From Macrostomum lignano (taxonomy: Eukaryota), in assembly GCA_002269645.1 (NCBI GenBank), contig NIVC01003533.1, positions 22,266-86,265 of the forward strand: DNA of 64,000 nt, given 5' to 3'. Positions 19,750 through 58,045 of this stretch are shown piece after piece. The notes beneath the pieces were generated by a model. The model had not been told where the DNA came from. It was given only the letters and a program-made list of their open reading frames with translations, and searched no databases. Position numbers and translations under genes: made by a program. The stretch's first letter is position 1; each line of letters starts with the position of its first letter.

Positions 19750-20560
19750 CGTGTACACAGTGACAGCCAGTGTACACAATGACAGCTGGGATTGGTGTAC
19801 ACAGTGACAGCTGGGGTTGGTGTACACAGTGTCAGCTGGGGTAGGTGTACACAGTGACAGCTGGGGTTGGTGTACACAGTGTCAGCTGGGGTTGGTGTAC
19901 ACAGTGACAGCTGGGGTTGGTGTACACAGTGTCAGCTGGGGTAGGTGTACACAGTGACAGCTGGGGTTGGTGTACACAGTGTCAGCTGGGGTTGGTGTAC
20001 ACAGTGACAGCTGGGGTTGGTGTACAGTGACAGCCAGTGTACACACTGACAGCTAGGGTTGGTGTACACAGTGACAGCTGGGGTTGGTGTACACACTGAC
20101 AGCTGGTGTTGGTGTACACACTGACAGCTGGGGTTGGTGTACACAGTGACAGCTGGGATTGGTGTACACAGTGACAGCTGGGATTGGTGTACACACTGAC
20201 AGCTGGGGTTGGTGTACACACTGACAGCTGGGGTTGGTGTACAGTGACAGCCAGTGTACACACTGACAGCTGGGGTTGGTGTACACAGTGACAGCTGGGG
20301 TTGGTGTACAGTGACAGCCAGTGTACACACTGACAGCTAGGGTTGGTGTACACAGTGACAGCTGGGGTTGGTGTACACACTGACAGCTGGGGTTGGTGTA
20401 CACACTGACAGCTGGTGTTGGTGTACACACTGACAGCTGGGGTTGGTGTACACACTGACAGCTGGTGTTGGTGTACACACTGACAGCTGGGGCTGTTGTA
20501 CACACTGACAGCTGGGGTTGGTGTACACACAGTGACAGCTCGGGTTGGTGTACACAGTGA
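19750..20560. repeat. 25-bp minisatellite (GTGTACACAGTGACAGCTGGGGTTG)
   Basis: Directly visible, between the convergent AFF and GEMIN6 3' ends. Confidence 0.95.
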
Positions 20561-20931
20561 CCGGTAAAATAGTACACACGTTACACTGATTCCGTTCATT
20601 GGTCTCACATCGTGACTAAACATTATGAAAATTACAGCAGCCGACTTACTGCTTTCCCACGCCTGTTTCCGCACCTAAGTCAAGATTGGGAAGAACAAAG
20701 TGCAAGCAAAATTATACTGGTAGAAAGTCTTCATTAAAAGCTTCACTAAGTCATTGAATAGAGAAAGCAGAGACAAGGCAATGTATTTATTTATAGAACA
20801 AACGCAAGCAATTAATGCAAATAGTTTAGACGGTAGTAGTGCCAAATCCGCTACTGTGAGTAGAGAAGAAGGATGTTTTACAGATAGAAAAACATGCAGC
20901 ATTAGCTAGGAGTTTTCAACTAAAGCGGATA

Positions 20932-21522
20932 CTACGGTGGCAATAAGGCTAGCAGCGCAGTACACCTGGCCAGTACAATCTCATTATTGCAATAGCAGGT
21001 GCGGCCAAGGTAGGGCGGCCTAATAGTGAGACTGTCGCCTAGAGTCAGGCTGAGCGAGTCCTCGCCACCCACGGCCAAGTCGATGCGGTGCTTGGCAAAC
21101 CAGGCCCGCACCTGGTCGCGGCGTTGGATTGTCGCCGATCCCACAGCGGAGTCGTCGAGTTCTTCGCCGTCGGCGCCGCACCCGACAGCCAGCTTGTCGA
21201 TGTCGATCCGCTGCTGCTCAGTTGCCGGCTGAGCGCCCGGCACCGGACAGACTTCGACAGTGGCTCCAGCCAGTAGGAAGTGCACTTGCCGGTCATCCAG
21301 GTCAACCAGCACCCGGGTCCGGCTGACCGGGTCCACCGTGTACAGCCAACCCGTGAACTGGCGACCGTCGGCGCAGGACACTCGTTGAAGCTGGTACAGC
21401 TGCGACATGAAGCTGGCGCATTCAGCACTGCTGGCTTCTTCACAGGGACCGGTGTAGACACATGGGGCACCGGTACTGGCACCGGTATTAGCACCGGAAA
21501 CAGATTCACTCATTAGGCTCAT
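20932..21522 (-). CDS. GEMIN6: Gem-associated protein 6 (SMN complex), single exon
   Basis: FTGWLYTVDPVSRTRVLV...VRAWFAKHRI...LTIRPPY...CYCNNEIVLARC matches Gemin6 (YKGWVLTTDPVSANIVLV...LKKWLEKNHI...LTIDPPY...SSNEIILSRV). ATG at 21522 (or 21513); AATAAA ~140 nt after the stop. Confidence 0.9.
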   Translation of the reverse strand: MSLMSESVSGANTGASTGAPCVYTGPCEEASSAECASFMSQLYQLQRVSCADGRQFTGWLYTVDPVSRTRVLVDLDDRQVHFLLAGATVEVCPVPGAQPATEQQRIDIDKLAVGCGADGEELDDSAVGSATIQRRDQVRAWFAKHRIDLAVGGEDSLSLTLGDSLTIRPPYLGRTCYCNNEIVLARCTALLALLPP

Positions 21523-21829
21523 GCCACTGCCGCAGGCGGGCCAGCAAGTCGCTCTTCTCCTTGTGCTTGTGCACCAGACAGTCCAGCAGACTCCGCTGCG
21601 TCTCAGAGTCCAGGTCGATACCCTCGGCCTGCTCAATCTGCTGTCTGGCTGTCTCGAGTTTTTGCCGAAGCTCCTGGATTTTTCCCGTAGTGCCGGGCGA
21701 ATCGCTGGCGTAGTGAATGAATATGTCGCGAATCAGCGGCCCGAATACCAGATCCACCTGCTGGATGGGGGCTGAGGCGGCTTCCTGATGCTGGCGGTGC
21801 TGCTGCTGCGGTTGCTGCTGGTGATGCAT
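21506..21829 (-). CDS. MED9: Mediator subunit 9, single exon, 107 aa
   Basis: FGPLIRDIF...DSP...LRQKLETARQQIEQAEGIDLDSETQRSLL...KSDLL matches MED9 (FLPLxHxII...DSP...LKSKFQEMR...PGIHLSPEQQ...KNELL). An in-frame TAG lies 3 codons upstream of the ATG. Confidence 0.85.
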   Translation of the reverse strand: MHHQQQPQQQHRQHQEAASAPIQQVDLVFGPLIRDIFIHYASDSPGTTGKIQELRQKLETARQQIEQAEGIDLDSETQRSLLDCLVHKHKEKSDLLARLRQWHEPNE

Positions 21830-21974
21830 GAGACGCTACTGGGACTCAGGACTGCTGCCTAGTGGTTCATGAGTTCCGGTGCGTGACAAATATTATGCCT
21901 AATAATTGCAGCATTAGGTGGCAGGATTACAATTAAAGGCTTACTTGAATAACACCTTAACTGAAGGCCTGAGA

Positions 21975-22520
21975 GTGGCCCAGCATCTGAGGATCTGAGA
22001 GGCTGGCCCAGCAACTGAGGATCTGGGAGGCTGGCCAAGCAACTGGGGATCTGGGAGACTGGTCCAGCAACCGGGGATCTGGGAGGCTGGCCCAGCAACT
22101 GGGGATCTGGGAGGCTGGCCCAGCAACTGGGGATCTGGGAGGCTGGCCTAGCAACTGGGGATCTGGGAGGCTGGCCCAGCAATTGAGAATCTGGGAGGCT
22201 GGCCCAGCAACTGGGGATCTGGGAGGGTGAAGGAAGACCTAGCAACTGGGGATCTGGGAGGGTGAAGGAAGGCCCAGCAGCTGAGGATCTGGGAGGGTGA
22301 AGGAAGACCCAGCAACTGAGGATCTGGGAGGGTGAAGGAAGACCTAGCAACTGAGGATCTGGGAGGGTGAAGGAAGACCCAGCAACTGAGGATCTGGAAG
22401 GGTGAAGGAAGACCTAGCAACTGGGGATCTGGGAGGGTGAAGGAAGGCCCAGCAGCTGAGGATCTGGGAGGGTGAAGGAAGACCTAGCAACTAAGGATCT
22501 GGGAGGCTGGTCAAGCAACT
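21975..22520 (-). repeat. 28-bp/35-bp composite minisatellite (GGGAGGCTGGCCCAGCAACTGGGGATCT and a longer variant)
   Basis: Directly visible. Confidence 0.92.
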
Positions 22521-23214
22521 GACAGTCTGGGAGTTTTTGAAAACAGCTAACGCAAATGAAACAATAGACACATTAAACAAGGCGACATTATCAGGCCATT
22601 AAATACAGTAAATATATTTAAACGCAACGAGCTGATCTCCAAGAGAACTGTTGGACACAAGCGGGTAAGCAAAACAACAATGTACAGGCAGATAGGTGAA
22701 TGAACACATCGACTTTCGCATTGTAACGAGTATACCGTGGACAGGGACTAAATATAGTAAAGATAAAATAGACAAATTGTCTCGCCTAATACAGATAGTA
22801 AATATACTCACTACACTAATTGAGTAGTAGAAATAATGCTAAATATATTACTAAAAGTAACCGCATGAGAATACAGAAACAAATAGTGTATGGTCCCCCC
22901 CTTTATTTTCTGTTAGTTAATAAAGATTCAATTGTGTACTGCACGGCTACTTAAGCCTAAGGAGCAATGCTTTCAATAGAAGGCATAAAAAGTACATCGC
23001 GTCCTGTTGAACAAAAGAAATGCATCACACTAGAAAATACGCTAAGGGTAGATAAGGACAAAATATCTACGAGTACCAACGTGTTATTAACTGCAATAAA
23101 AACTCACTCATTTATAATAATTTCTTTCATCCAGGATTATACAACTTAGAGCCTAAGATACTGATATACTGTATCCCGCTTTGATATAGAACTACTAAAT
23201 ACAACATGGATATT

Positions 23215-26095
23215 TAGCGATTTTGATTCTTAGTTAAGAGATTAGGATTCTTAGTTTAGAGATTTGGATTCTTAGTTTAGCGATTTGGATTCTTAGTTTA
23301 GAGATTTGGATTCTTAGTTTAGCGATTTGGATTCTTAGTTTAGAGATTTGGATTCATAGTTTAGAGATTAGGATTCTTAGTTTAGAGATTAGGATTCTTA
23401 GTTTAGAGATTTGGATTCTTAGTTTAGCGATTTGGATTCTTAGTTTAGAGATTTGGATTCTTAGTTTAGCGATTTGGATTCTTAGTTTAGAGATTTGGAT
23501 TCATAGTTTAGAGATTAGGATTCTTAGTTTAGAGATTGGGATTCTTAGTTTAGCGATTCGGATTCTTAGTTTAGAGATTAGGATTCTTAAGTTTGAGATT
23601 TGGATTCTTAGTTTAGCGATTCGGATTCTTAGTTTAGAGATTAGGATTCTTAGTTTAGAGATTAGGATTCTTAGTTAAGAGATTAGGATTCATAGTTTAG
23701 AGATTTGGATTCTTAGTTTAGAGATTTATATTCATAGTTTAGCGATTCGGATTCTTAGTTCAGCGATTAGGATTCTTAGTTTAGAGATTAGGATTCTTAG
23801 TTTAGAGATTGGGATTCTTAGTTTAGAGATTAGGATTCTTAGTTTAGAGATTTGGATTCTTAGTTTAGCCATTCGGATTCTTAGTTTAGAGATTAGGATT
23901 CTTAGTTTAGAGATTAGGATTCTTAGTTTAGAGATTGGGATTCTTAGTTTAGAGATTAGGATTCTTAGTTTAGAGATTTGGATTCTTAGTTTAGAGATTT
24001 GGATTCTTAGTTTAGAGATTAGGATTCTTAGTTTAGCGATTAGGATTCTTAGTTTAGAGATTAGGATTCTTAGTTTAGAGATTAGGATTCTTAGTTTAGA
24101 GATTAGGATTCTTAGTTAAGAGATTAGGATTCTTAGTTTAGAGATTAGGATTCTTAGTTTAGAGATTAGGATTCTTAGTTTAGAGATTAGGATTCTTAGT
24201 TTAGAGATTAGGATTCTTAGCTCAGCGATTAGGATTCTTAGTTTAGAGATAAGGATTCTTAGTTTAGAGATTGGGATTCTTAGTTTAGAGATTGGGATTC
24301 TTAGTTTAGAGATTAGGATTCTTAGTTTAGAGATTAGGATTCTTAGTTTAGCGATTAGGATTCTTAGTTTAGAGATTAGGATTCTTAGTTCAGCGATTAG
24401 GATTCTTAGTTTAGAGATTAGGATTCTTAGTTCAGCGATTAGGATTCTTAGTTTAGAGATTAGGATTCTTAGTTTAGCGATTAGGATTCTTAGTTTAGAG
24501 ATTAGGATTCTTAGTTTAGAGATTTGGATTCTTAGTTTAGAGATTTGGATTCATAGTTTAGAGATTAGGATTCTTAAGTTTGAGATTTGGATTCTTAGTT
24601 CAGCGATTCGGATTCTTAGTTCAGCGATTAGGATTCTTAGTTTAGAGATTAGGATTCTTAGTTTAGAGATTAGGATTCTTAGTTAAGAGATTAGGATTCA
24701 TAGTTTAGAGATTTGGATTCTTAGTTTAGAGACTTGGATTCTTAGTTTAGCGATTCGGATTCTTAGTTTAGAGATTTGGATTCTTAGTTTAGCGATTCGG
24801 ATTCTTAGTTCAGCGATTAGGATTCTTAGTTTAGAGATTAGGATTCTTAGTTTAGAGATTAGGATTCTTAGTTTAGAGATTAGGATTCTTAGTTTAGAGA
24901 TTAGGATTCTTAGTTAAGAGATTAGGATTCATAGTTTAGAGATTTGGATTCTTAGCTTAGAGATTTGGATTCATAGTTTAGAGATTAGGATTCTTAAGTT
25001 TGAGACTTGGATTCTTAGTTTAGCGATTCGGATTCTTAGTTCAGCGATTAGGATTCTTAGTTTAGCGATTAGGATTCTTAGTTTAGCGATTAGGATTCTT
25101 AGTTTAGAGATTAGGATTCTTAGTTCAGCGATTAGGATTCTTAGTTTAGCGATTGGGATTCTTAGTTTAGAGATTTGGGCTCTTAGTTTAGAGATTTGGA
25201 TTCTTAGTTTAGCGATTCGGATTCTTAGTTCAGCGATTAGGATTCTTAGTTTAGAGATTAGGATTCTTAGTTAAGAGATTAGGATTCATAGTTTAGAGAT
25301 TTGGATTCTTAGTTTAGAGATTTGGATTCTTAGTTTAGCGATTCGGATTCTTAGTTTAGAGATTTGGATTCTTAGTTTAGCGATTCGGATTCTTAGTTTA
25401 GAGATTAGGATTCTTAGTTTAGAGATTAGGATTCTTAGTTAAGAGATTAGGATTCATAGTTTAGAGATTTGGATTCTTAGTTTAGCGATTCGGATTCTTA
25501 GTTTAGAGATTAGGATTCTTAGTTTAGAGATTAGGATTCTTAGTTAAGAGATTAGGATTCATAGTTTAGAGATTTGGATTCTTAGTTTAGAGATTTGGAT
25601 TCATAATTTAGAGATTAGGATTCTTAAGTTTGAGACTTGGATTCTTAGTTTAGCGATTCGGATTCTTAGTTCAGCGATTAGGATTCTTAGTTTAGCGATT
25701 AGGATTCTTAGTTTAGCGATTAGGATTCTTAGTTTAGAGATTAGGATTCTTAGTTCAGCGATTAGGATTCTTAGTTTAGCGATTGGGATTCTTAGTTTAG
25801 AGATTTGGGCTCTTAGTTTAGAGATTTGGATTCTTAGTTTAGCGATTCGGATTCTTAGTTCAGCGATTAGGATTCTTAGTTTAGAGATTAGGATTCTTAG
25901 TTTAGAGATTGGGATTCTTAGTTTAGAGATTAGGATTCTTAGTTTAGAGATTAGGATTCTTAGTTCAGCGATTAGGATTCTTAGTTTAGCGATTAGGATT
26001 CTTAGTTTAGAGATTTGGGCTCTTAGTTTAGCGATTAGGATTCTTAGTTCAGCGATTAGGGTTCTTAGTTCAGTGATTAGGGTTCTTAGTGTAGC
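23215..26095. repeat. 21-bp satellite (GATTAGGATTCTTAGTTTAGA), ~2.9 kb
   Basis: Directly visible; diagnostic variant units recur at multiples of 21 bp. Confidence 0.97.
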
Positions 26096-26139
26096 GATTA
26101 TATATACGAGCTATTTATTCTTAAGCTCTTGTTAGCCAG

Positions 26140-26697
26140 TCAATTAGCCGCATGCAGCTGCACCACAGACCGGTGGCCAAAGGGGCTGGCGTACAAGATG
26201 CCCACCTGCCTATAGACGTGTTTAGTAATGCCAGCATCTACCAGATAGGTGGAGCCATAGCCAGCGTCAACGGGCACCGGTAGGCAGTACTGCAGATTAA
26301 TTTTGCACTCCAACCTAGCCGGATTTCGTTGCTGAGGACACACGCCAACAACCGGAGCCCTGTTGGAGCGGCACCACAGGGCCAGGGTGTGCTCCGGGCT
26401 GTCCGGCTCGCTAGTGGCCAGAACTATGTAGTCTAGCAGCCAGGGCAGGTCGCGGCAGCTGTGCACCACTGGACAGCCGGTGGTGCGGAACAGCTGTACT
26501 TCCTGGGCCAGCTCACTTGAGGCCGCCAGTTCGCGTTCGCTGCAGTACACGTGCACTCGAACCTCTTTATTAGCCAGGTGACGAGCCATTGATAATCCCA
26601 TTAGGCCGCGCCTGCCTGGCCCCACTAGCACGGCCACCTGCGGCAGCTGGTGCTGATTGCCCGGCTGCAGCCGGCTGGCCCCGCCCATCTGCTGCAC
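26140..26697 (-). CDS. EDC3: Enhancer of mRNA decapping 3, exon 4 (YjeF-N domain)
   Basis: MGGASRLQPGNQHQLPQVAVLVGP...ARHLANKEVRV parallels EDC3 LGGPNRLNPKNVHQRPTVALLCGP...GRHLANHDVQV. Acceptor AG at 26699-26698; AATAAA ~20 nt after the stop. Confidence 0.9.
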   Translation of the reverse strand: MQQMGGASRLQPGNQHQLPQVAVLVGPGRRGLMGLSMARHLANKEVRVHVYCSERELAASSELAQEVQLFRTTGCPVVHSCRDLPWLLDYIVLATSEPDSPEHTLALWCRSNRAPVVGVCPQQRNPARLECKINLQYCLPVPVDAGYGSTYLVDAGITKHVYRQVGILYASPFGHRSVVQLHAAN

Positions 26698-26789
26698 CTG
26701 GATTGGGTGCCAGGTTGGAAGTCAAGGTCAACTGAGGTCAGATACACAGAGCCTTAATATCAATGCTCAAAGAGTCTAAATGTTATAAA

Positions 26790-26980
26790 CTAGTTGGAAT
26801 TTGAGTCATAGCACATAAAAGCACAGCAATTTGAGTCATAGCCCATACAAGCACAGCAATTTGAGTCATAGCCCAAATAGCACTGCAATTTGAGTCATAG
26901 CCCATAAAAGCACAGCAATTTGAGTCAAAGCTCATAAAAGAACTGCAATTTGAGTCATAGCTCATAAAAGAACTGCAATT
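26790..26980. repeat. 30-bp minisatellite in EDC3 intron 3
   Basis: GCACAGCAATTTGAGTCATAGCCCATAAAA units. Confidence 0.9.
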
Positions 26981-26988
26981 CAGCTCAC

Positions 26989-27150
26989 CAGAAACTCGGA
27001 CGCGCTGCGGCCAAAAGCTTCGGCTAAGCGGGCGGCCGTTAAGCCGGCTTTATCAGCGGCAGACAGGACAGCCACCCGGAGCTCCTCGGTCACAGACGGC
27101 ACGGGGAGACCCACGTCTGTGGCAAACTGGCAGTCCACTTTGCATGGCAC
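26989..27150 (-). CDS. EDC3: EDC3 exon 3
   Basis: A 162-nt phase 0/0 exon bounded by CTCAG| and |GTGAG. FATDVGLPVPSVTEELR...GLTAARL resembles FCTDSGLVVPSISYELH...GLTLERRL. It is absent from the ORF track. Confidence 0.88.
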
Positions 27151-27171
27151 CTGAGGAGACGGAACGCGGTT

Positions 27172-28130
27172 TGGGGCGATTCTCAGTGAGATTTATTAGG
27201 GGCGATTCTCAGAGAGATTTAGTAGGGGGCGATTCTAAGGGAGATTTATTAGAGGGCGATCTCAGGGAGATTTAGTAGGGGGCGATTCTCAGGGAGATTT
27301 ATTAGAGGGCGATCTCAGGGAGATTTAGTAGGGGGCGATTCTCAGGGAGATTTATTAGAGGGCGATCTCAGGGAGATTTAGTAGGGGGCGATTCTCAGGG
27401 AGATTTATTAGAGGGCGATCTCAGGGAGATTTAGTAGGGGGCGATTCTCAGGGAGATTTATTAGAGGGCGATCTCAGGGAGATTTAGTAGGGGGCGATTC
27501 TCAGGGAGATTTATTAGGGGGGGGGGAATCTCAGGGAGATTTAGTAGGGGGCGATTCTCAGGGAGATTTATTAGAGGGCGATCTCAGGGAGATTTAGTAG
27601 GGGGCGATTCTCAGGGAGATTTATTAGGGGGGGGGAATCTCAGGGAGATTTATTAGGGGGGAGATTCTCAGTGAGATTTATTAGGAGGAGATTCTCAGTG
27701 AGACTTATTAGGGGGAGATTCTCAGGGAGATTTATTAGGGGGAGATTCTCAGGGAGATTTATTAGGGGGGGGATTCTTAGTGAAATTTATTAGGGGAGAT
27801 TCTCAGGGAGATTTATTAGGGGGAGATTCTCAGGGAGATTTATTAGGGGGGGGGGATTCTTAGTGAAATTTATTAGGGGAGATTCTCAGGGAGATTTATT
27901 AGGGGGGGGGGATTCTTAGTGAAATTTATTAGGGGAGATTCTCAGGGAGATTTATTAGGGGGGAGGGAGATTCTCAGTGAAATTTATTAGGGGAGACTCT
28001 CAGGGAGATTTATTAGGGGGAGATTCTCAGGGAGATGTATTAGGGGCGATTCTCAGGGAGATGTATTAGGGGGCGATTCTCAGGGAGATTTATTAGGGGG
28101 GAGATTCTCAGGGAGATTTATTAGGGGGGA
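27172..28130. repeat. ~26-27-bp G-rich minisatellite filling EDC3 intron 2
   Basis: GGGAGATTTATTAGGGGGCGATTCTCA-type units. Confidence 0.95.
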
Positions 28131-28135
28131 GTTAC

Positions 28136-28477
28136 CTGGATAGAGGGCGCGGCGGGAGCGGCACCGCCGGGCAGCAGGACGCTCTGGTCTGGCCGCAGCT
28201 TCGGCTCCGGCTGGGGTGGCTGGGCGGTGCGCACCAGGTCCGGCTCGGGAGTCTGGCCGCTGTCCACCATGGCGTAGAAGGCCTGCTTGTCGAACAGCGC
28301 CAGGTTGCCTTCGAAATCGAAATCATCCATCATGTCGCCGGCTGACATGCTGAAGGCGTTGTGCCTTGGCTGCTGCTTTTGGGCCGATGCATTCTGCTGC
28401 GGCAGTTTGCTGCCCCGGTAGGGGACGAATGCGCTGCCGCCATTGTTGCCGGGGACGCTGGCGCTAGTGTCTTGTTG
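28136..28477 (-). CDS. EDC3: EDC3 exon 2 (FDF motif)
   Basis: Contains DDFDFEGNLALFDK. Acceptor TTTCCATAG| and donor CAG|GTAAC, phase 0/0. Confidence 0.9.
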
Positions 28478-29010
28478 CTATGGAAACAGAGGGAAAGGAC
28501 ATTAGCAGTGCATAAATAACAGCTATAATCGATTGCCAATCTAAAGAACTAAATAGCTCGATCTGTCAATCAATCAATCTATCTATTCGAATATCTATCT
28601 ATCTATCTATCTACCTACTTCTATTTTTCCAGCTGCCTTAATCGTTTCCGGTGATCTTGTGTGCGTGCATTCAGCTTGATTGGCTGCGGCAAGCAAGCTC
28701 GAAAGAGCTCGCTTCGCTCGCTCTTTCTCGCTATCTACCATCTATTGCCAAGACCTGCACCGGAGCGGTTACGAAAATTAGATTTCTCGGTAGTTGCTCG
28801 CACTCTTTTGCACTACTTGAGTAGTCTGATTTTCGTTCGGCATGGCTGGTTCCAGCAGGTAGTTCCTCTGGATAAAAGCGCTTACCGCGCCCATTGGCTT
28901 TCCAGCTGCCTTAATCGTTTCCGGTGATCTTGTGTGCGTGCTTTCAGCTTGATTGGCTGCGGCAAGCAAGCTCGAAAGAGCTCGCTTCGCTTGCTCTTTC
29001 TCGCTATCTA

Positions 29011-29052
<42 letters not shown>

Positions 29053-29101
29053 CCTAACAGCGGGTAATCATAGCTGAATAGATATACTGTAAGCTACGCA
29101 C

Positions 29102-29629
29102 TTGTCGATATTGCTGCTCTCCAATCGGCGTCTTTCTAGTTGGAGTAACGCCTCGTTGCTGCTGCTGCTGCTGCATCGGTGAATCCTTAGGCTGCTGTTG
29201 CTTCTTCTTGTTGCTACCAGAGAAGTGCGACGGGGCCTTAACAGGCGGGCTGGAGCAAATATAAGCAGGTGTTGCATTTGGTATGCTCATCAGCTTCTCG
29301 GCTGTGCGCTGCTGCTTTGCAATAGCAGCAGCCGAAGTGGCTGAAGCTGAGGTTGCTGTCAACTGCTGCTTTTTTGGTTGTTGCTTTGCGGTTTCTGTCG
29401 AAGCAGAAGTGGTAGCGGCAGCGGCCAGAGCATCCTTGGACTGCAGCATGACAATGCTAACGATCGATGACCTGTGCAGTGTCACCTCACTGGTATCGCT
29501 GGGCAGTCCATTGCGGCTGGCATCGCGCAGTGTCACCTTCTCGTTGCTAACGTCAACAACTGTGCCAACAAATGTGCCTAGTAGTGGGCCACAGTCTAAC
29601 TGCAGCTGGGCTCCAATGAACTCACCCAT
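29102..29629 (-). CDS. EDC3: EDC3 exon 1 (LSm domain plus low-complexity linker)
   Basis: MGEFIGAQLQLDCGPLLGTFVGTV...EVTL resembles the EDC3 LSm domain (WLGSIVSINCGDSLGVYQGRV...EVTF). Donor CAA|GTGCGT. The spliced product is ~529 aa. Confidence 0.88.
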
Positions 29630-30720
29630 GCTATAGATTGATTGGAATTTACTGTGTACTGTGGAACATCAATTGATCAGGTGGATTAAATTAACTTTTC
29701 TTGGAATTCACATGAAGAGTTCTACCATAGCTTGGTTACAGGAACACACATTTCCCATATCTAGTAATAGGAGCCATGCCCACCCCCCCCCCACTTTTTT
29801 AGCAACTGTTGATTTATTTTTCTTCAAATAGAATGCTAAAATTGTTATAATTTTTTAATCCATTTAAGTATTTGCTACTTTAATATTTTATAAGAAGTGG
29901 AGACTATTGGATTACAAAATCAGTCAAAATAAAGAGAAAGAGGTTAAATCCATCTTTTTGTTTATTTGAGAAAAGTTAGATTATGCAAGTTATCTAAACT
30001 TGTAACTAGGTATTTTGCATTTATGTCATTAAGTGAATATAATATAAGTTTGTTTTTTGTTAGGGTCTATTAATAAATGAATCCCTTTAACTACTATCTA
30101 ATATATAACAATGTTAGCTGAATAATTGTTTCTCTAACACTTTTTCTTAACCTTTTATCTAACCAATTCCCCCTAGTCATTCTGTTTTTAAACAAAAATT
30201 ACCTTGCAAATCTCAAGGGATTTTGACCAAAACTTTTATAAATTTCTAAACCAGTTAAGTATTGCTTTATTTAATTTTGTTTATTTACAATTACAGAGTT
30301 GTGATCATTTGAATTTATATTTTCCAATCTAAATGAATCTAGCCAACTACTTGCCAACCATAGTGTCCAGTGAATATCTCTGCTTTTTTTTGGTTGGCAT
30401 TTCATGAGGGTTCTTTATAGGTTTATAGTTTATATGTTAAATATTCTGGGACAGTTTAAAACAATCTGCACAATGAAAACAATAAAATCAGTCTGATTTC
30501 TTTTCTTAAATATATTAATCTTTTAATGAAACTTTTCAAATATATATATGAAATATAAATCTTAACAAAACAACTATAAGCTAATATTATGAAACACCTG
30601 TTATTACTAAAATAACTATACTTATGAATTTTTTAATTTTTCATCAAAAATAAAATGTGTCTATCACAAAAGCAACTTGGTTACTTGTCACCAAAACTAC
30701 TATTTATTACTATGCTTGGG

Positions 30721-56929: not shown

Positions 56930-58045
<1,116 letters not shown>

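What the first reader, a model, noticed from the sequence alone, without database searches (positions are those of the whole stretch)
20932..21840. MED9 and GEMIN6 overlap stop-to-start: candidate eukaryotic bicistronic mRNA
Seen (minus strand): ...TGG C-ATG-AG CCT A-ATG-AG TGA. Two GEMIN6 ATGs (21522, 21513) lie inside the last codons of MED9, overlapping it by 17 or 8 nt, with no intron or poly(A) signal between the genes and one AATAAA after GEMIN6. The MED9 ATG context is weak (ctcATGc), there is no ATG in any frame across the 304 nt between the two starts, and the first GEMIN6 ATG has a purine at -3. Established: these are hallmarks of leaky-scanning or termination-reinitiation bicistrons. 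No calicivirus-type UGGGA motif was seen upstream. Inference: a Mediator subunit and an SMN-complex subunit are translationally coupled. Alternatives are trans-splicing at the weak GCGGCAG|TGGCATG site inside MED9, or a MED9-GEMIN6 fusion hidden by a 1-nt assembly error.
Basis: partly seen in the sequence, partly recalled or inferred. Interest (0 to 1): 0.86.

Follow-up and report, generated by a model that had tools for sequence, protein, structure and literature searches.

The report
Conserved MED9–GEMIN6 two-gene transcription unit
In the flatworm Macrostomum lignano the Mediator gene MED9 ends 17 bases inside the start of the SMN-complex gene GEMIN6, and the same head-to-tail pairing recurs in a sea slug, an annelid and about nine unidentified animals, so it looks like an old, apparently unreported two-protein messenger RNA whose mode of translation is still open.

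Summary
The window is Macrostomum lignano contig NIVC01003533.1. On the minus strand an intronless MED9 ORF (21829-21506, 107 aa) overlaps an intronless GEMIN6 ORF (21522-20932, 196 aa) by 17 nt. No ATG lies between the two starts, no poly(A) hexamer lies between the genes, and one AATAAA follows GEMIN6. The junction is identical in three genome copies, so it is not an assembly error.

New evidence: the last MED9 exon sits directly upstream of GEMIN6 on the same strand in Aplysia (74 nt gap), Owenia (80 nt) and about nine unidentified metagenome lineages. Most gaps run from a 20-nt overlap to 56 nt. One 1.1-kb contig lacks the conserved MED9 intron and carries both ORFs, which looks like a spliced bicistronic mRNA. 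The pairing is absent in amphioxus and a bee.

Co-transcription is therefore well supported. How GEMIN6 is translated is not settled: leaky scanning is permitted in M. lignano, but the ATG-free stretch is explained by MED9's amino-acid sequence. Spliced-leader trans-splicing, common in this worm, remains the main rival. This is a new member of a known kind, with notable deep conservation. No paper found links the two genes.

The parts
21506..21829 (-). MED9 coding sequence (107 aa, intronless, complete)
   Evidence: ORF listed. Pfam Med9 scores 34 bits, above the 26.9 cut-off. Best PDB hit is human MED9, 7emf_I, E = 5e-4, query residues 6-100. It aligns end to end with MED9 ORFs of other loci. 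It is absent from every protein database searched.
20932..21522 (-). GEMIN6 coding sequence (196 aa, intronless), annotated in GenBank as BOX15_Mlig014426g4 / PAA50930.1
   Evidence: ORF listed. The Gemin6 and Gemin6_C Pfam domains lie just below their cut-offs. The search recovered the annotated M. lignano protein at 98% identity, and phmmer found 125 GEMIN6 relatives. A profile that includes it hits PDB Gemin6 entries 7bbl and 1y96. The conserved N-terminal helix lies upstream of the next in-frame Met (21408), so the start must be at 21522 or 21513.
21506..21522 (-). 17-nt stop/start overlap: GEMIN6 ATG1 21522-21520, ATG2 21513-21511, MED9 stop TGA 21508-21506
   Evidence: Read directly. The sequence is identical in the two other genome copies, L002 and L003. 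RNA folding around it is unremarkable, z = -0.15.
21523..21826 (-). 304-nt stretch without ATG in any frame, between the MED9 and GEMIN6 start codons
   Evidence: P = 0.0014 against dinucleotide shuffles, but P(0 ATG) = 0.62-0.88 under synonymous resampling.
21827..21835 (-). MED9 start codon in a weak context (cgtctcATGc)
   Evidence: An in-frame TAG lies 9 nt upstream, so no longer MED9 ORF is possible.
20786..20791 (-). The only canonical poly(A) hexamer (AATAAA) of the unit, about 140 nt after the GEMIN6 stop
   Evidence: There is no AATAAA or ATTAAA between the MED9 start and the GEMIN6 stop.
21527..21529 (-).
   Evidence: The context gcggCAG|tgg does not match the published YTNCAG acceptor motif. 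The ATG at the end of the spliced leader would open a 7-codon ORF (MWHEPNE*) that runs over both GEMIN6 ATGs.
21961..21966 (-). The only match to the published M. lignano SL-acceptor motif (CTTCAG) within 1.4 kb, 132 nt upstream of the MED9 ATG: a possible 5' boundary of the unit
   Evidence: The motif is taken from PMC8629364.
21466..21497 (-). 12-nt coding tandem repeat in the GEMIN6 N-terminus, with an in-frame length difference between genome copies

Best explanation
MED9 and GEMIN6 form one ancient transcription unit. In M. lignano a single mature mRNA carries both complete ORFs. It starts upstream of 21829 and is polyadenylated after the AATAAA at 20791-20786.

MED9 can only be made from this bicistronic mRNA, because the MED9 stop lies inside GEMIN6 and no poly(A) signal occurs before the end of GEMIN6.

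I judge it most likely that GEMIN6 is translated from the same mRNA. Ribosomes would skip the weak-context MED9 AUG, scan 304 nt that contain no AUG, and start at AUG 21522 (G at -3) or 21513. Some re-initiation by ribosomes terminating at the UGA 5-14 nt downstream is possible.

Shown: the ORFs, the overlap, the absence of internal signals, and the conservation of the arrangement. Inferred: the single mature mRNA in M. lignano and the route of GEMIN6 translation.
For: 1. The overlap, the lack of introns and the single poly(A) hexamer are read directly.
2. The junction is identical in three assembled copies.
3. The annotated proteome of M. lignano has GEMIN6 but no MED9. This is as expected if one transcript model received one CDS.
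4. The last MED9 exon lies directly upstream of GEMIN6 on the same strand in these loci:
- Aplysia californica: +74 nt
- Owenia fusiformis: +80 nt
- L007: -20 nt
- L050: ATGA overlap
- L047: +2 nt
- L048, L049, L051: +28 nt
- L011, L012: +31 and +32 nt
- L041: +40 nt
- L010: +56 nt
- L005: +293 nt
- L046: +718 nt
Such spacers leave no room for a terminator plus promoter.
5. Molluscs and annelids are not among the groups listed as having SL trans-splicing (PMC8629364). There the unit cannot be resolved as an operon.
6. L010 is a 1.1-kb contig with both complete ORFs. It lacks the MED9 intron found at the same position in nine other loci. It therefore looks like a spliced bicistronic mRNA.
7. 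In M. lignano the weak MED9 AUG context, the absence of intervening AUGs and a purine at -3 of the first GEMIN6 AUG all permit leaky scanning.
8. The only CAG just upstream of GEMIN6 does not match the SL-acceptor motif. Because the leader ends in AUG, splicing there would place an overlapping upstream ORF over the GEMIN6 starts.
Against: - No transcript, SL-read, poly(A)-read or ribosome-profiling data could be consulted for this locus. Supplement searches found nothing.
- The ATG-free stretch is explained by the MED9 protein sequence. No synonymous-site avoidance was detected in any lineage.
- Aplysia, L005 and L010 have 5-7 ATGs in MED9, so leaky scanning cannot be the ancestral or universal mechanism.
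- Re-initiation after an ORF of about 100 codons is normally inefficient (established knowledge). No TURBS-like UGGGA is present.
- M. lignano trans-splices 30-39% of its genes, and only 44% of known acceptors carry the motif.
- The cDNA nature of L010 is inferred, not documented.
Confidence: 0.5

Rival explanations
1. SL-resolved alternative processing. The unit is transcribed as one precursor. GEMIN6 protein comes mainly from a monocistronic mRNA made by trans-splicing the 35-nt spliced leader to an acceptor inside the end of MED9, for example CAG at 21527. This destroys MED9 on that molecule. MED9 comes from precursors that escape trans-splicing. The logic is that of an SL1-type operon with mutually exclusive processing.
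For: - The organism is M. lignano.
- In this species 30-39% of genes are SL trans-spliced, about 15% lie in operons, and about 7% of assembled transcripts are multi-gene precursors.
- AG dinucleotides exist just upstream of and between the two GEMIN6 ATGs.
- An upstream same-strand YjeF_N gene lies within a repeat-adjusted distance of about 0.9 kb, so the unit may sit in a larger operon.
Against: - No YTNCAG acceptor motif occurs near the junction. The only one within 1.4 kb lies upstream of MED9.
- The leader ends in AUG. Splicing at 21527 would create an upstream ORF (MWHEPNE*) that overlaps both GEMIN6 AUGs. Splicing at the other AG sites gives SL-AUG reading frames that stop at once and are out of frame with GEMIN6.
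- The typical operon spacer in this species is about 100 nt, not -17.
- The same arrangement is kept in molluscs and annelids, which are not known to trans-splice.
Confidence: 0.3
2. Nested promoter. GEMIN6 has its own transcription start inside the MED9 coding region and is translated from an ordinary capped monocistronic mRNA. The longer MED9 mRNA merely runs through GEMIN6 to share its poly(A) site.
For: - Nothing in the sequence forbids it.
- Lineages with many ATGs in MED9 (Aplysia, L005, L010) need some route other than leaky scanning.
- NCBI lists two accessions with the same Aplysia GEMIN6 protein. This is consistent with two transcript variants.
Against: - Spacing of -20 to +80 nt conserved over hundreds of millions of years is not needed if GEMIN6 has its own promoter.
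- No promoter evidence could be gathered with these tools.
- L010 shows both ORFs on one apparently spliced molecule.
Confidence: 0.13
3. Artefact or fusion. Either a 1-nt assembly error or a programmed +1 frameshift produces a MED9-GEMIN6 fusion protein, or the MED9 ORF is a decayed relic acting only as an upstream ORF.
For: The two frames differ by +1, and the overlap is short.
Against: - Three independently assembled copies have the identical junction.
- In ten other lineages the two ORFs are separated by spacers with stops, so no fusion exists there.
- None of the long GEMIN6 homologues carries a Med9 domain.
- The MED9 ORF is full length, intact and passes the Pfam threshold.
Confidence: 0.03

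Closest known systems
Animal bicistronic genes with overlapping or closely spaced ORFs read by leaky scanning (for example human MOCS2A/MOCS2B, and the dicistronic genes annotated in Drosophila; from my own knowledge)
   Same: Two unrelated, complete, conserved proteins lie on one strand with no terminator or promoter between them. The downstream start sits at or before the upstream stop. The upstream AUG is in a weak context, and no AUG lies between the two starts in M. lignano.
   Different: No transcript or translation data exist for this pair. The ATG-free stretch shows no selection signal of its own. Several lineages with the same pair do carry ATGs in MED9.
Drosophila MED9 / CG42518 locus
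   Same: A single P-element insertion is named as an allele of both MED9 and CG42518 (PMC4978919). From memory, FlyBase treats the two as one dicistronic gene. If so, MED9 is an upstream cistron in an insect too.
   Different: I could not check what CG42518 encodes. The fly GEMIN6 orthologue I know of (CG14164) is a different gene. In the bee Habropoda, GEMIN6 is not next to MED9. Homology of the two arrangements is untested.
Flatworm and nematode SL trans-spliced operons
   Same: The same organism uses them widely. They are same-strand gene pairs transcribed as one precursor.
   Different: Operon genes are separated by a spacer (mode about 100 nt here), with an acceptor upstream of the downstream gene and a poly(A) site for the upstream gene. 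Here the coding sequences overlap, MED9 has no poly(A) signal of its own, and no acceptor motif is present.
Viral termination-reinitiation (calicivirus, influenza B M2/BM2) with a TURBS element
   Same: The stop and start overlap within a few nucleotides. L050 even has an ATGA overlap.
   Different: No UGGGA motif lies upstream in 13 of 14 loci, which is chance level. No special RNA structure is present. The spacing varies from -20 to +80 nt among lineages.

Membership tests
MED9 (Mediator subunit 9, Pfam PF07544) | Med9 domain scoring above Pfam's gathering threshold | tested here: met
   34.0 bits against a cut-off of 26.9, residues 49-101.
MED9 (Mediator subunit 9, Pfam PF07544) | Homology to an experimentally defined MED9 over most of its length | tested here: met
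   Human MED9 chain 7emf_I is the best PDB hit, E = 4.9e-4, query residues 6-100 against chain residues 42-136.
GEMIN6 (PF06372 Sm-like domain + PF20417 C-terminal domain) | Both Pfam domains above their gathering thresholds | tested here: not met
   31.1 bits against 33.4, and 23.2 against 23.9. Both are just below threshold, in the correct order.
GEMIN6 (PF06372 Sm-like domain + PF20417 C-terminal domain) | Significant full-length similarity to recognised GEMIN6 proteins | tested here: met
   phmmer found 125 relatives with E down to 4e-15, matching across both domains. Sampled hits carry both Pfam domains or are named gem-associated protein 6. A family profile that includes it hits PDB Gemin6.
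Eukaryotic bicistronic mRNA read by leaky scanning | Both ORFs present on one mature, capped, polyadenylated mRNA | not testable with these tools
   Indirect evidence only. There is no poly(A) hexamer or intron between the ORFs. The adjacency is conserved. L010 is an intron-less 1.1-kb contig carrying both ORFs.
Eukaryotic bicistronic mRNA read by leaky scanning | Upstream AUG in a poor context, and no AUG between the two starts | tested here: met
   The MED9 context is ctcATGc, and there are 0 ATGs in 304 nt. This is not beyond what the protein sequence predicts.
Eukaryotic bicistronic mRNA read by leaky scanning | Downstream protein made from the bicistronic mRNA | not testable with these tools
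   This needs ribosome profiling or reporter assays.
Termination-reinitiation with TURBS | Stop and restart codons overlapping or within a few nucleotides | tested here: met
   The restart AUGs lie 14 and 5 nt upstream of the UGA.
Termination-reinitiation with TURBS | UGGGA motif (18S rRNA-complementary) within about 100 nt upstream | tested here: not met
   It is absent in the window and in 12 of 13 related loci.
SL trans-spliced operon (M. lignano type) | The organism uses SL trans-splicing and operons | tested here: met
   The window is 100% identical to M. lignano contig NIVC01003533.1.
SL trans-spliced operon (M. lignano type) | Acceptor motif YTNCAG just upstream of the downstream gene, and a spacer of about 100 nt | tested here: not met
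   No motif lies near the junction, and the spacer is -17 nt. Only 44% of known sites carry the motif, so this result is weak.
SL trans-spliced operon (M. lignano type) | SL-containing reads mapping at the 5' end of GEMIN6 | not testable with these tools
   The read tracks are not available here. Supplements held no entry for Mlig014426.

The most novel reading that the evidence does not exclude
MED9-GEMIN6 is an ancient bicistronic gene at least as old as the common ancestor of flatworms, molluscs and annelids. GEMIN6 is translated from the same mRNA as MED9. The stop-start junction has drifted between overlap (-20, -17, ATGA) and short spacers (+2 to +80 nt), with lineage-specific use of leaky scanning or re-initiation. 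Standard one-CDS-per-transcript annotation has hidden MED9 in these genomes.
Probability: 0.45. Interest if true: 0.75.

Novelty: new member of a known kind. Interest (0 to 1): 0.62.

Why it matters
Truly bicistronic cellular mRNAs that persist over hundreds of millions of years are few.

If this pair is confirmed:
- It couples a Mediator middle-module subunit to an snRNP-assembly factor.
- It offers natural variants of one junction (overlap, 2 nt, about 30 nt, about 80 nt) for comparing how animal ribosomes reach a second ORF.
- M. lignano has stable transgenesis, so reporter tests can be done in the animal itself.

There is also a practical consequence. MED9 appears to be missing from the gene sets of M. 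lignano, and from the Aplysia and Owenia loci as listed here, because only one CDS was assigned per transcript. 'Missing Mediator subunit' calls in spiralian genomes may therefore be annotation artefacts.

Tried and rejected
1. Fusion or assembly error. Rejected: three copies are identical at the junction, spacers with stops separate the ORFs in other species, and no long GEMIN6 homologue has a Med9 domain.
2. ATG depletion as a selection signal. It looked strong against dinucleotide shuffles (P = 0.0014). It disappeared under synonymous-codon resampling in M. lignano (P(0 ATG) = 0.62-0.88) and in 11 other loci.
3. TURBS or UGGGA motif. One of 14 loci has it, which is chance level.
4. RNA structure at the junction. 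z = -0.15.
5. Transcript evidence.
- Exact-protein look-ups found no contig, from RNA-seq assemblies or elsewhere, encoding the window's MED9 or 196-aa GEMIN6.
- Supplements of PMC5816591 and PMC5730564 held no entry for Mlig014426, MED9 or GEMIN6. PMC8629364 has no supplements held.
6. Literature. Seven searches for MED9 or Gemin6 with bicistronic, dicistronic or polycistronic terms found no report of this pair. They turned up only recombinant co-expression vectors and the Drosophila MED9/CG42518 allele table.
7. Cis-splicing inside the unit. There is no GTRAG donor in either ORF.
8. Taxonomic placement of the metagenome loci by best named GEMIN6 match. This gave only rough placement: spiralian-like for L010-L012, L041 and L046, and unresolved for L047-L051.
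9. One related-loci run failed because the 28-sequence alignment was too diverse. It was repeated with six sequences.

Full report
**1. What is in the window**

The window is 100% identical to Macrostomum lignano assembly Mlig_3_7, contig NIVC01003533.1. The organism is a free-living flatworm.

Two intronless ORFs lie on the minus strand.
- MED9: ATG at 21829, stop TGA at 21508-21506, 107 aa.
- GEMIN6: ATGs at 21522 and 21513, stop at 20934-20932, 196 aa. It is in the +1 frame relative to MED9.
- The overlap is 17 nt (8 nt from the second ATG).

- No ATG occurs in any frame in the 304 nt between the two starts.
- The MED9 ATG is in a weak context (ctcATGc).
- The first GEMIN6 ATG has G at -3.
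- No AATAAA or ATTAAA occurs before the GEMIN6 stop, and one AATAAA lies at 20791-20786.
- Neither ORF contains a GTRAG donor.
- No UGGGA lies upstream of the junction.

**2. Gene identities**

MED9 is secure. It passes the Pfam threshold (34 against 26.9 bits). Its best PDB match is human MED9 over nearly its whole length.

GEMIN6 is secure despite a marginal Pfam result. It falls just under both Pfam cut-offs. It has 125 significant relatives of GEMIN6 length in an exhaustive HMMER search. Sampled relatives carry both Gemin6 domains or are named gem-associated protein 6.

The conserved N-terminal helix of GEMIN6 lies upstream of the next in-frame Met. The start must therefore be at 21522 or 21513, and the overlap is real.

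GenBank annotates only GEMIN6 here (PAA50930.1, Mlig014426.g4). The MED9 ORF matches no protein in the databases searched.

**3. Not an artefact**

Two further copies of the locus in the same assembly (L002, L003; genes g1 and g3) are 99% identical. Their junction is identical to the window's. The copies differ by an in-frame 12-nt repeat unit inside GEMIN6 and a few substitutions. A hidden fusion caused by a 1-nt error is therefore very unlikely.

**4. The decisive new evidence is comparative**

I fetched GEMIN6 loci from other organisms and scanned them with a MED9 profile. A Med9-domain exon lies directly upstream of GEMIN6 on the same strand in about 12 lineages.

| Locus | Organism | MED9 stop to GEMIN6 ATG |
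|---|---|---|
| Window | M. lignano | -17 nt |
| L007 | unknown | -20 nt |
| L050 | unknown | ATGA overlap |
| L047 | unknown | +2 nt |
| L048, L049, L051 | unknown, close relatives | +28 nt |
| L011, L012 | unknown, close relatives | +31 and +32 nt |
| L041 | unknown | +40 nt |
| L010 | unknown | +56 nt |
| L006 | Aplysia californica | +74 nt |
| L058 | Owenia fusiformis | +80 nt |
| L005 | gastropod-like | +293 nt |
| L046 | unknown | +718 nt |

The pairing is absent in several places:
- Branchiostoma lanceolatum
- the bee Habropoda laboriosa
- a large group of closely related metagenome contigs, about 20 of which have 0.7-4 kb of upstream flank
- L008 and L009

Only GEMIN6 is listed as a called gene in the Aplysia and Owenia loci. 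One caveat applies: the index keeps only the longest product per gene.

A MED9 intron sits at the same position, just before the 'VEKDSHD' block, in nine loci. M. lignano has lost it. The 1.1-kb contig L010 also lacks it, yet carries complete MED9 and GEMIN6 ORFs with short UTR-like ends. The simplest reading is that L010 derives from a spliced, mature bicistronic mRNA. This is inferred, because I could not verify the sample type.

**5. What follows**

Spacers of -20 to +80 nt, kept across Platyhelminthes, Mollusca and Annelida, leave no room for a terminator and a promoter. I consider co-transcription well supported, at about 0.85.

In M. lignano the MED9 stop lies inside GEMIN6, and no poly(A) signal precedes the GEMIN6 3' UTR. 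The MED9 mRNA must therefore contain the whole GEMIN6 ORF (inference from the sequence).

**6. How GEMIN6 is translated remains open**

Leaky scanning is permitted in M. lignano by the weak upstream AUG, the absence of intervening AUGs and a purine at -3. The ATG-free stretch is not independent evidence, however.
- It is rare against dinucleotide shuffles (P = 0.0014).
- It is expected given the Met-poor MED9 protein: P(0 ATG) = 0.62-0.88 under synonymous resampling.
- The same holds for all 11 other loci tested.
- Aplysia, L005 and L010 have 5-7 ATGs in MED9, so another route must operate there.

Re-initiation is also uncertain. A TURBS-type motif is absent. The junction RNA is not unusually structured.

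**7. The main rival is specific to the organism**

M. lignano trans-splices 30-39% of its genes to a 35-nt leader that ends in AUG. About 15% of its genes lie in operons (PMC8629364; PMC5730564).

Three points argue against trans-splicing at this junction.
- The nearest CAG (21527) does not fit the published YTNCAG motif.
- The leader's AUG would open a 7-codon ORF that overlaps both GEMIN6 AUGs.
- The only motif match within 1.4 kb lies 132 nt upstream of MED9.

The argument is weak, because only 44% of known sites carry the motif. The same arrangement also persists in phyla not known to trans-splice. I put this rival at about 0.3, a nested promoter at about 0.13, and artefact or fusion at about 0.03.

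**8. Comparison with what is known, and novelty**

Bicistronic cellular genes are known in animals. From my own knowledge, examples include MOCS2 and many Drosophila dicistronic genes.

A Drosophila P-element table lists one insertion as an allele of both MED9 and CG42518 (PMC4978919). This suggests that MED9 is an upstream cistron in flies too. I could not determine what CG42518 encodes, and in a bee GEMIN6 is unlinked to MED9.

The searches that paired MED9 or Gemin6 with bicistronic, dicistronic or polycistronic terms found no paper connecting the two genes.

I classify the finding as a new member of a known kind. Two things make it more interesting than most: its conservation across at least three phyla, and the fact that MED9 seems to be hidden from current annotations.

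**9. Verdict**
- Observation: confirmed.
- Bicistronic transcription unit: well supported by conservation.
- Translational coupling: plausible but unproven.
- Interest: 0.62.

Noticed in passing
window 21466-21497 (-): A 12-nt coding tandem repeat (GGCACCGGTACT x2.7) lies in the GEMIN6 N-terminus. Copies L002 and L003 lack one unit. The GenBank protein for this locus (PAA50930.1, 192 aa) lacks four residues (STGA) that the genome sequence encodes (196 aa).
   Followed up: partly
window 19770-20561, 21976-22506, 23213-26100: Large tandem arrays bracket the MED9-GEMIN6 unit: 25 nt x33, 28/35 nt x9 each, and 21 nt x137. The unique sequence of the unit starts right at the end of the 28-nt array.
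   Followed up: partly
window ~26140-29662 (-): A YjeF_N-domain gene (540 aa, with introns) lies upstream on the same strand. After subtracting tandem repeats, its distance to the MED9 ATG is about 0.9 kb. That is under the 1-kb operon threshold used for M. lignano in PMC8629364, so the unit may belong to a larger operon.
   Followed up: no
L006 9681-9926 (Aplysia), L058 9486-9920 (Owenia), window 21506-21829: MED9 is not listed as a called gene or protein in any of these three annotated genomes at this locus. It appears hidden in what is modelled as the GEMIN6 5' UTR.
   Followed up: partly
L005, L006, L011, L012, L041, L046, L047, L048, L058: A MED9 intron sits at exactly the same codon position, before the 'VEKDSHD / IENDPSD / IEEGQD' block, in nine loci. 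It is absent in M. lignano and in the cDNA-like contig L010.
   Followed up: yes
L007 9664-10020: This MED9 ORF of 118 codons has no in-frame ATG at all. Its start must come from an upstream exon or a spliced leader. The GEMIN6 here has an unusual low-complexity N-terminal extension of about 135 aa, and two in-frame ATGs (9983, 10001) lie inside MED9.
   Followed up: no
L058 9921-10000 (Owenia spacer); L046 1069-1786: The intercistronic spacers contain splice-like signals. Owenia has GAT|GTAAGT ... TTATTATAG plus an ATGTAA mini-ORF. L046 has CAG|GTAATG 17 nt after the MED9 stop. The long spacers may be shortened by splicing.
   Followed up: no
L047-L051, 6-9 nt before the MED9 stop: A TTTCAG (acceptor-like, coding for Phe-Gln) is kept just before the MED9 stop in these five loci. 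It could be an alternative 3' splice site that skips most of MED9, or simply a consequence of amino-acid conservation.
   Followed up: no
window 57001-58000 and 23001-26000: Both are very AT-rich stretches with extreme GC skew: GC 0.25 with skew 0.94, and GC about 0.31 with skew 0.4-0.54. The second is the 21-nt array. The first was not examined.
   Followed up: no
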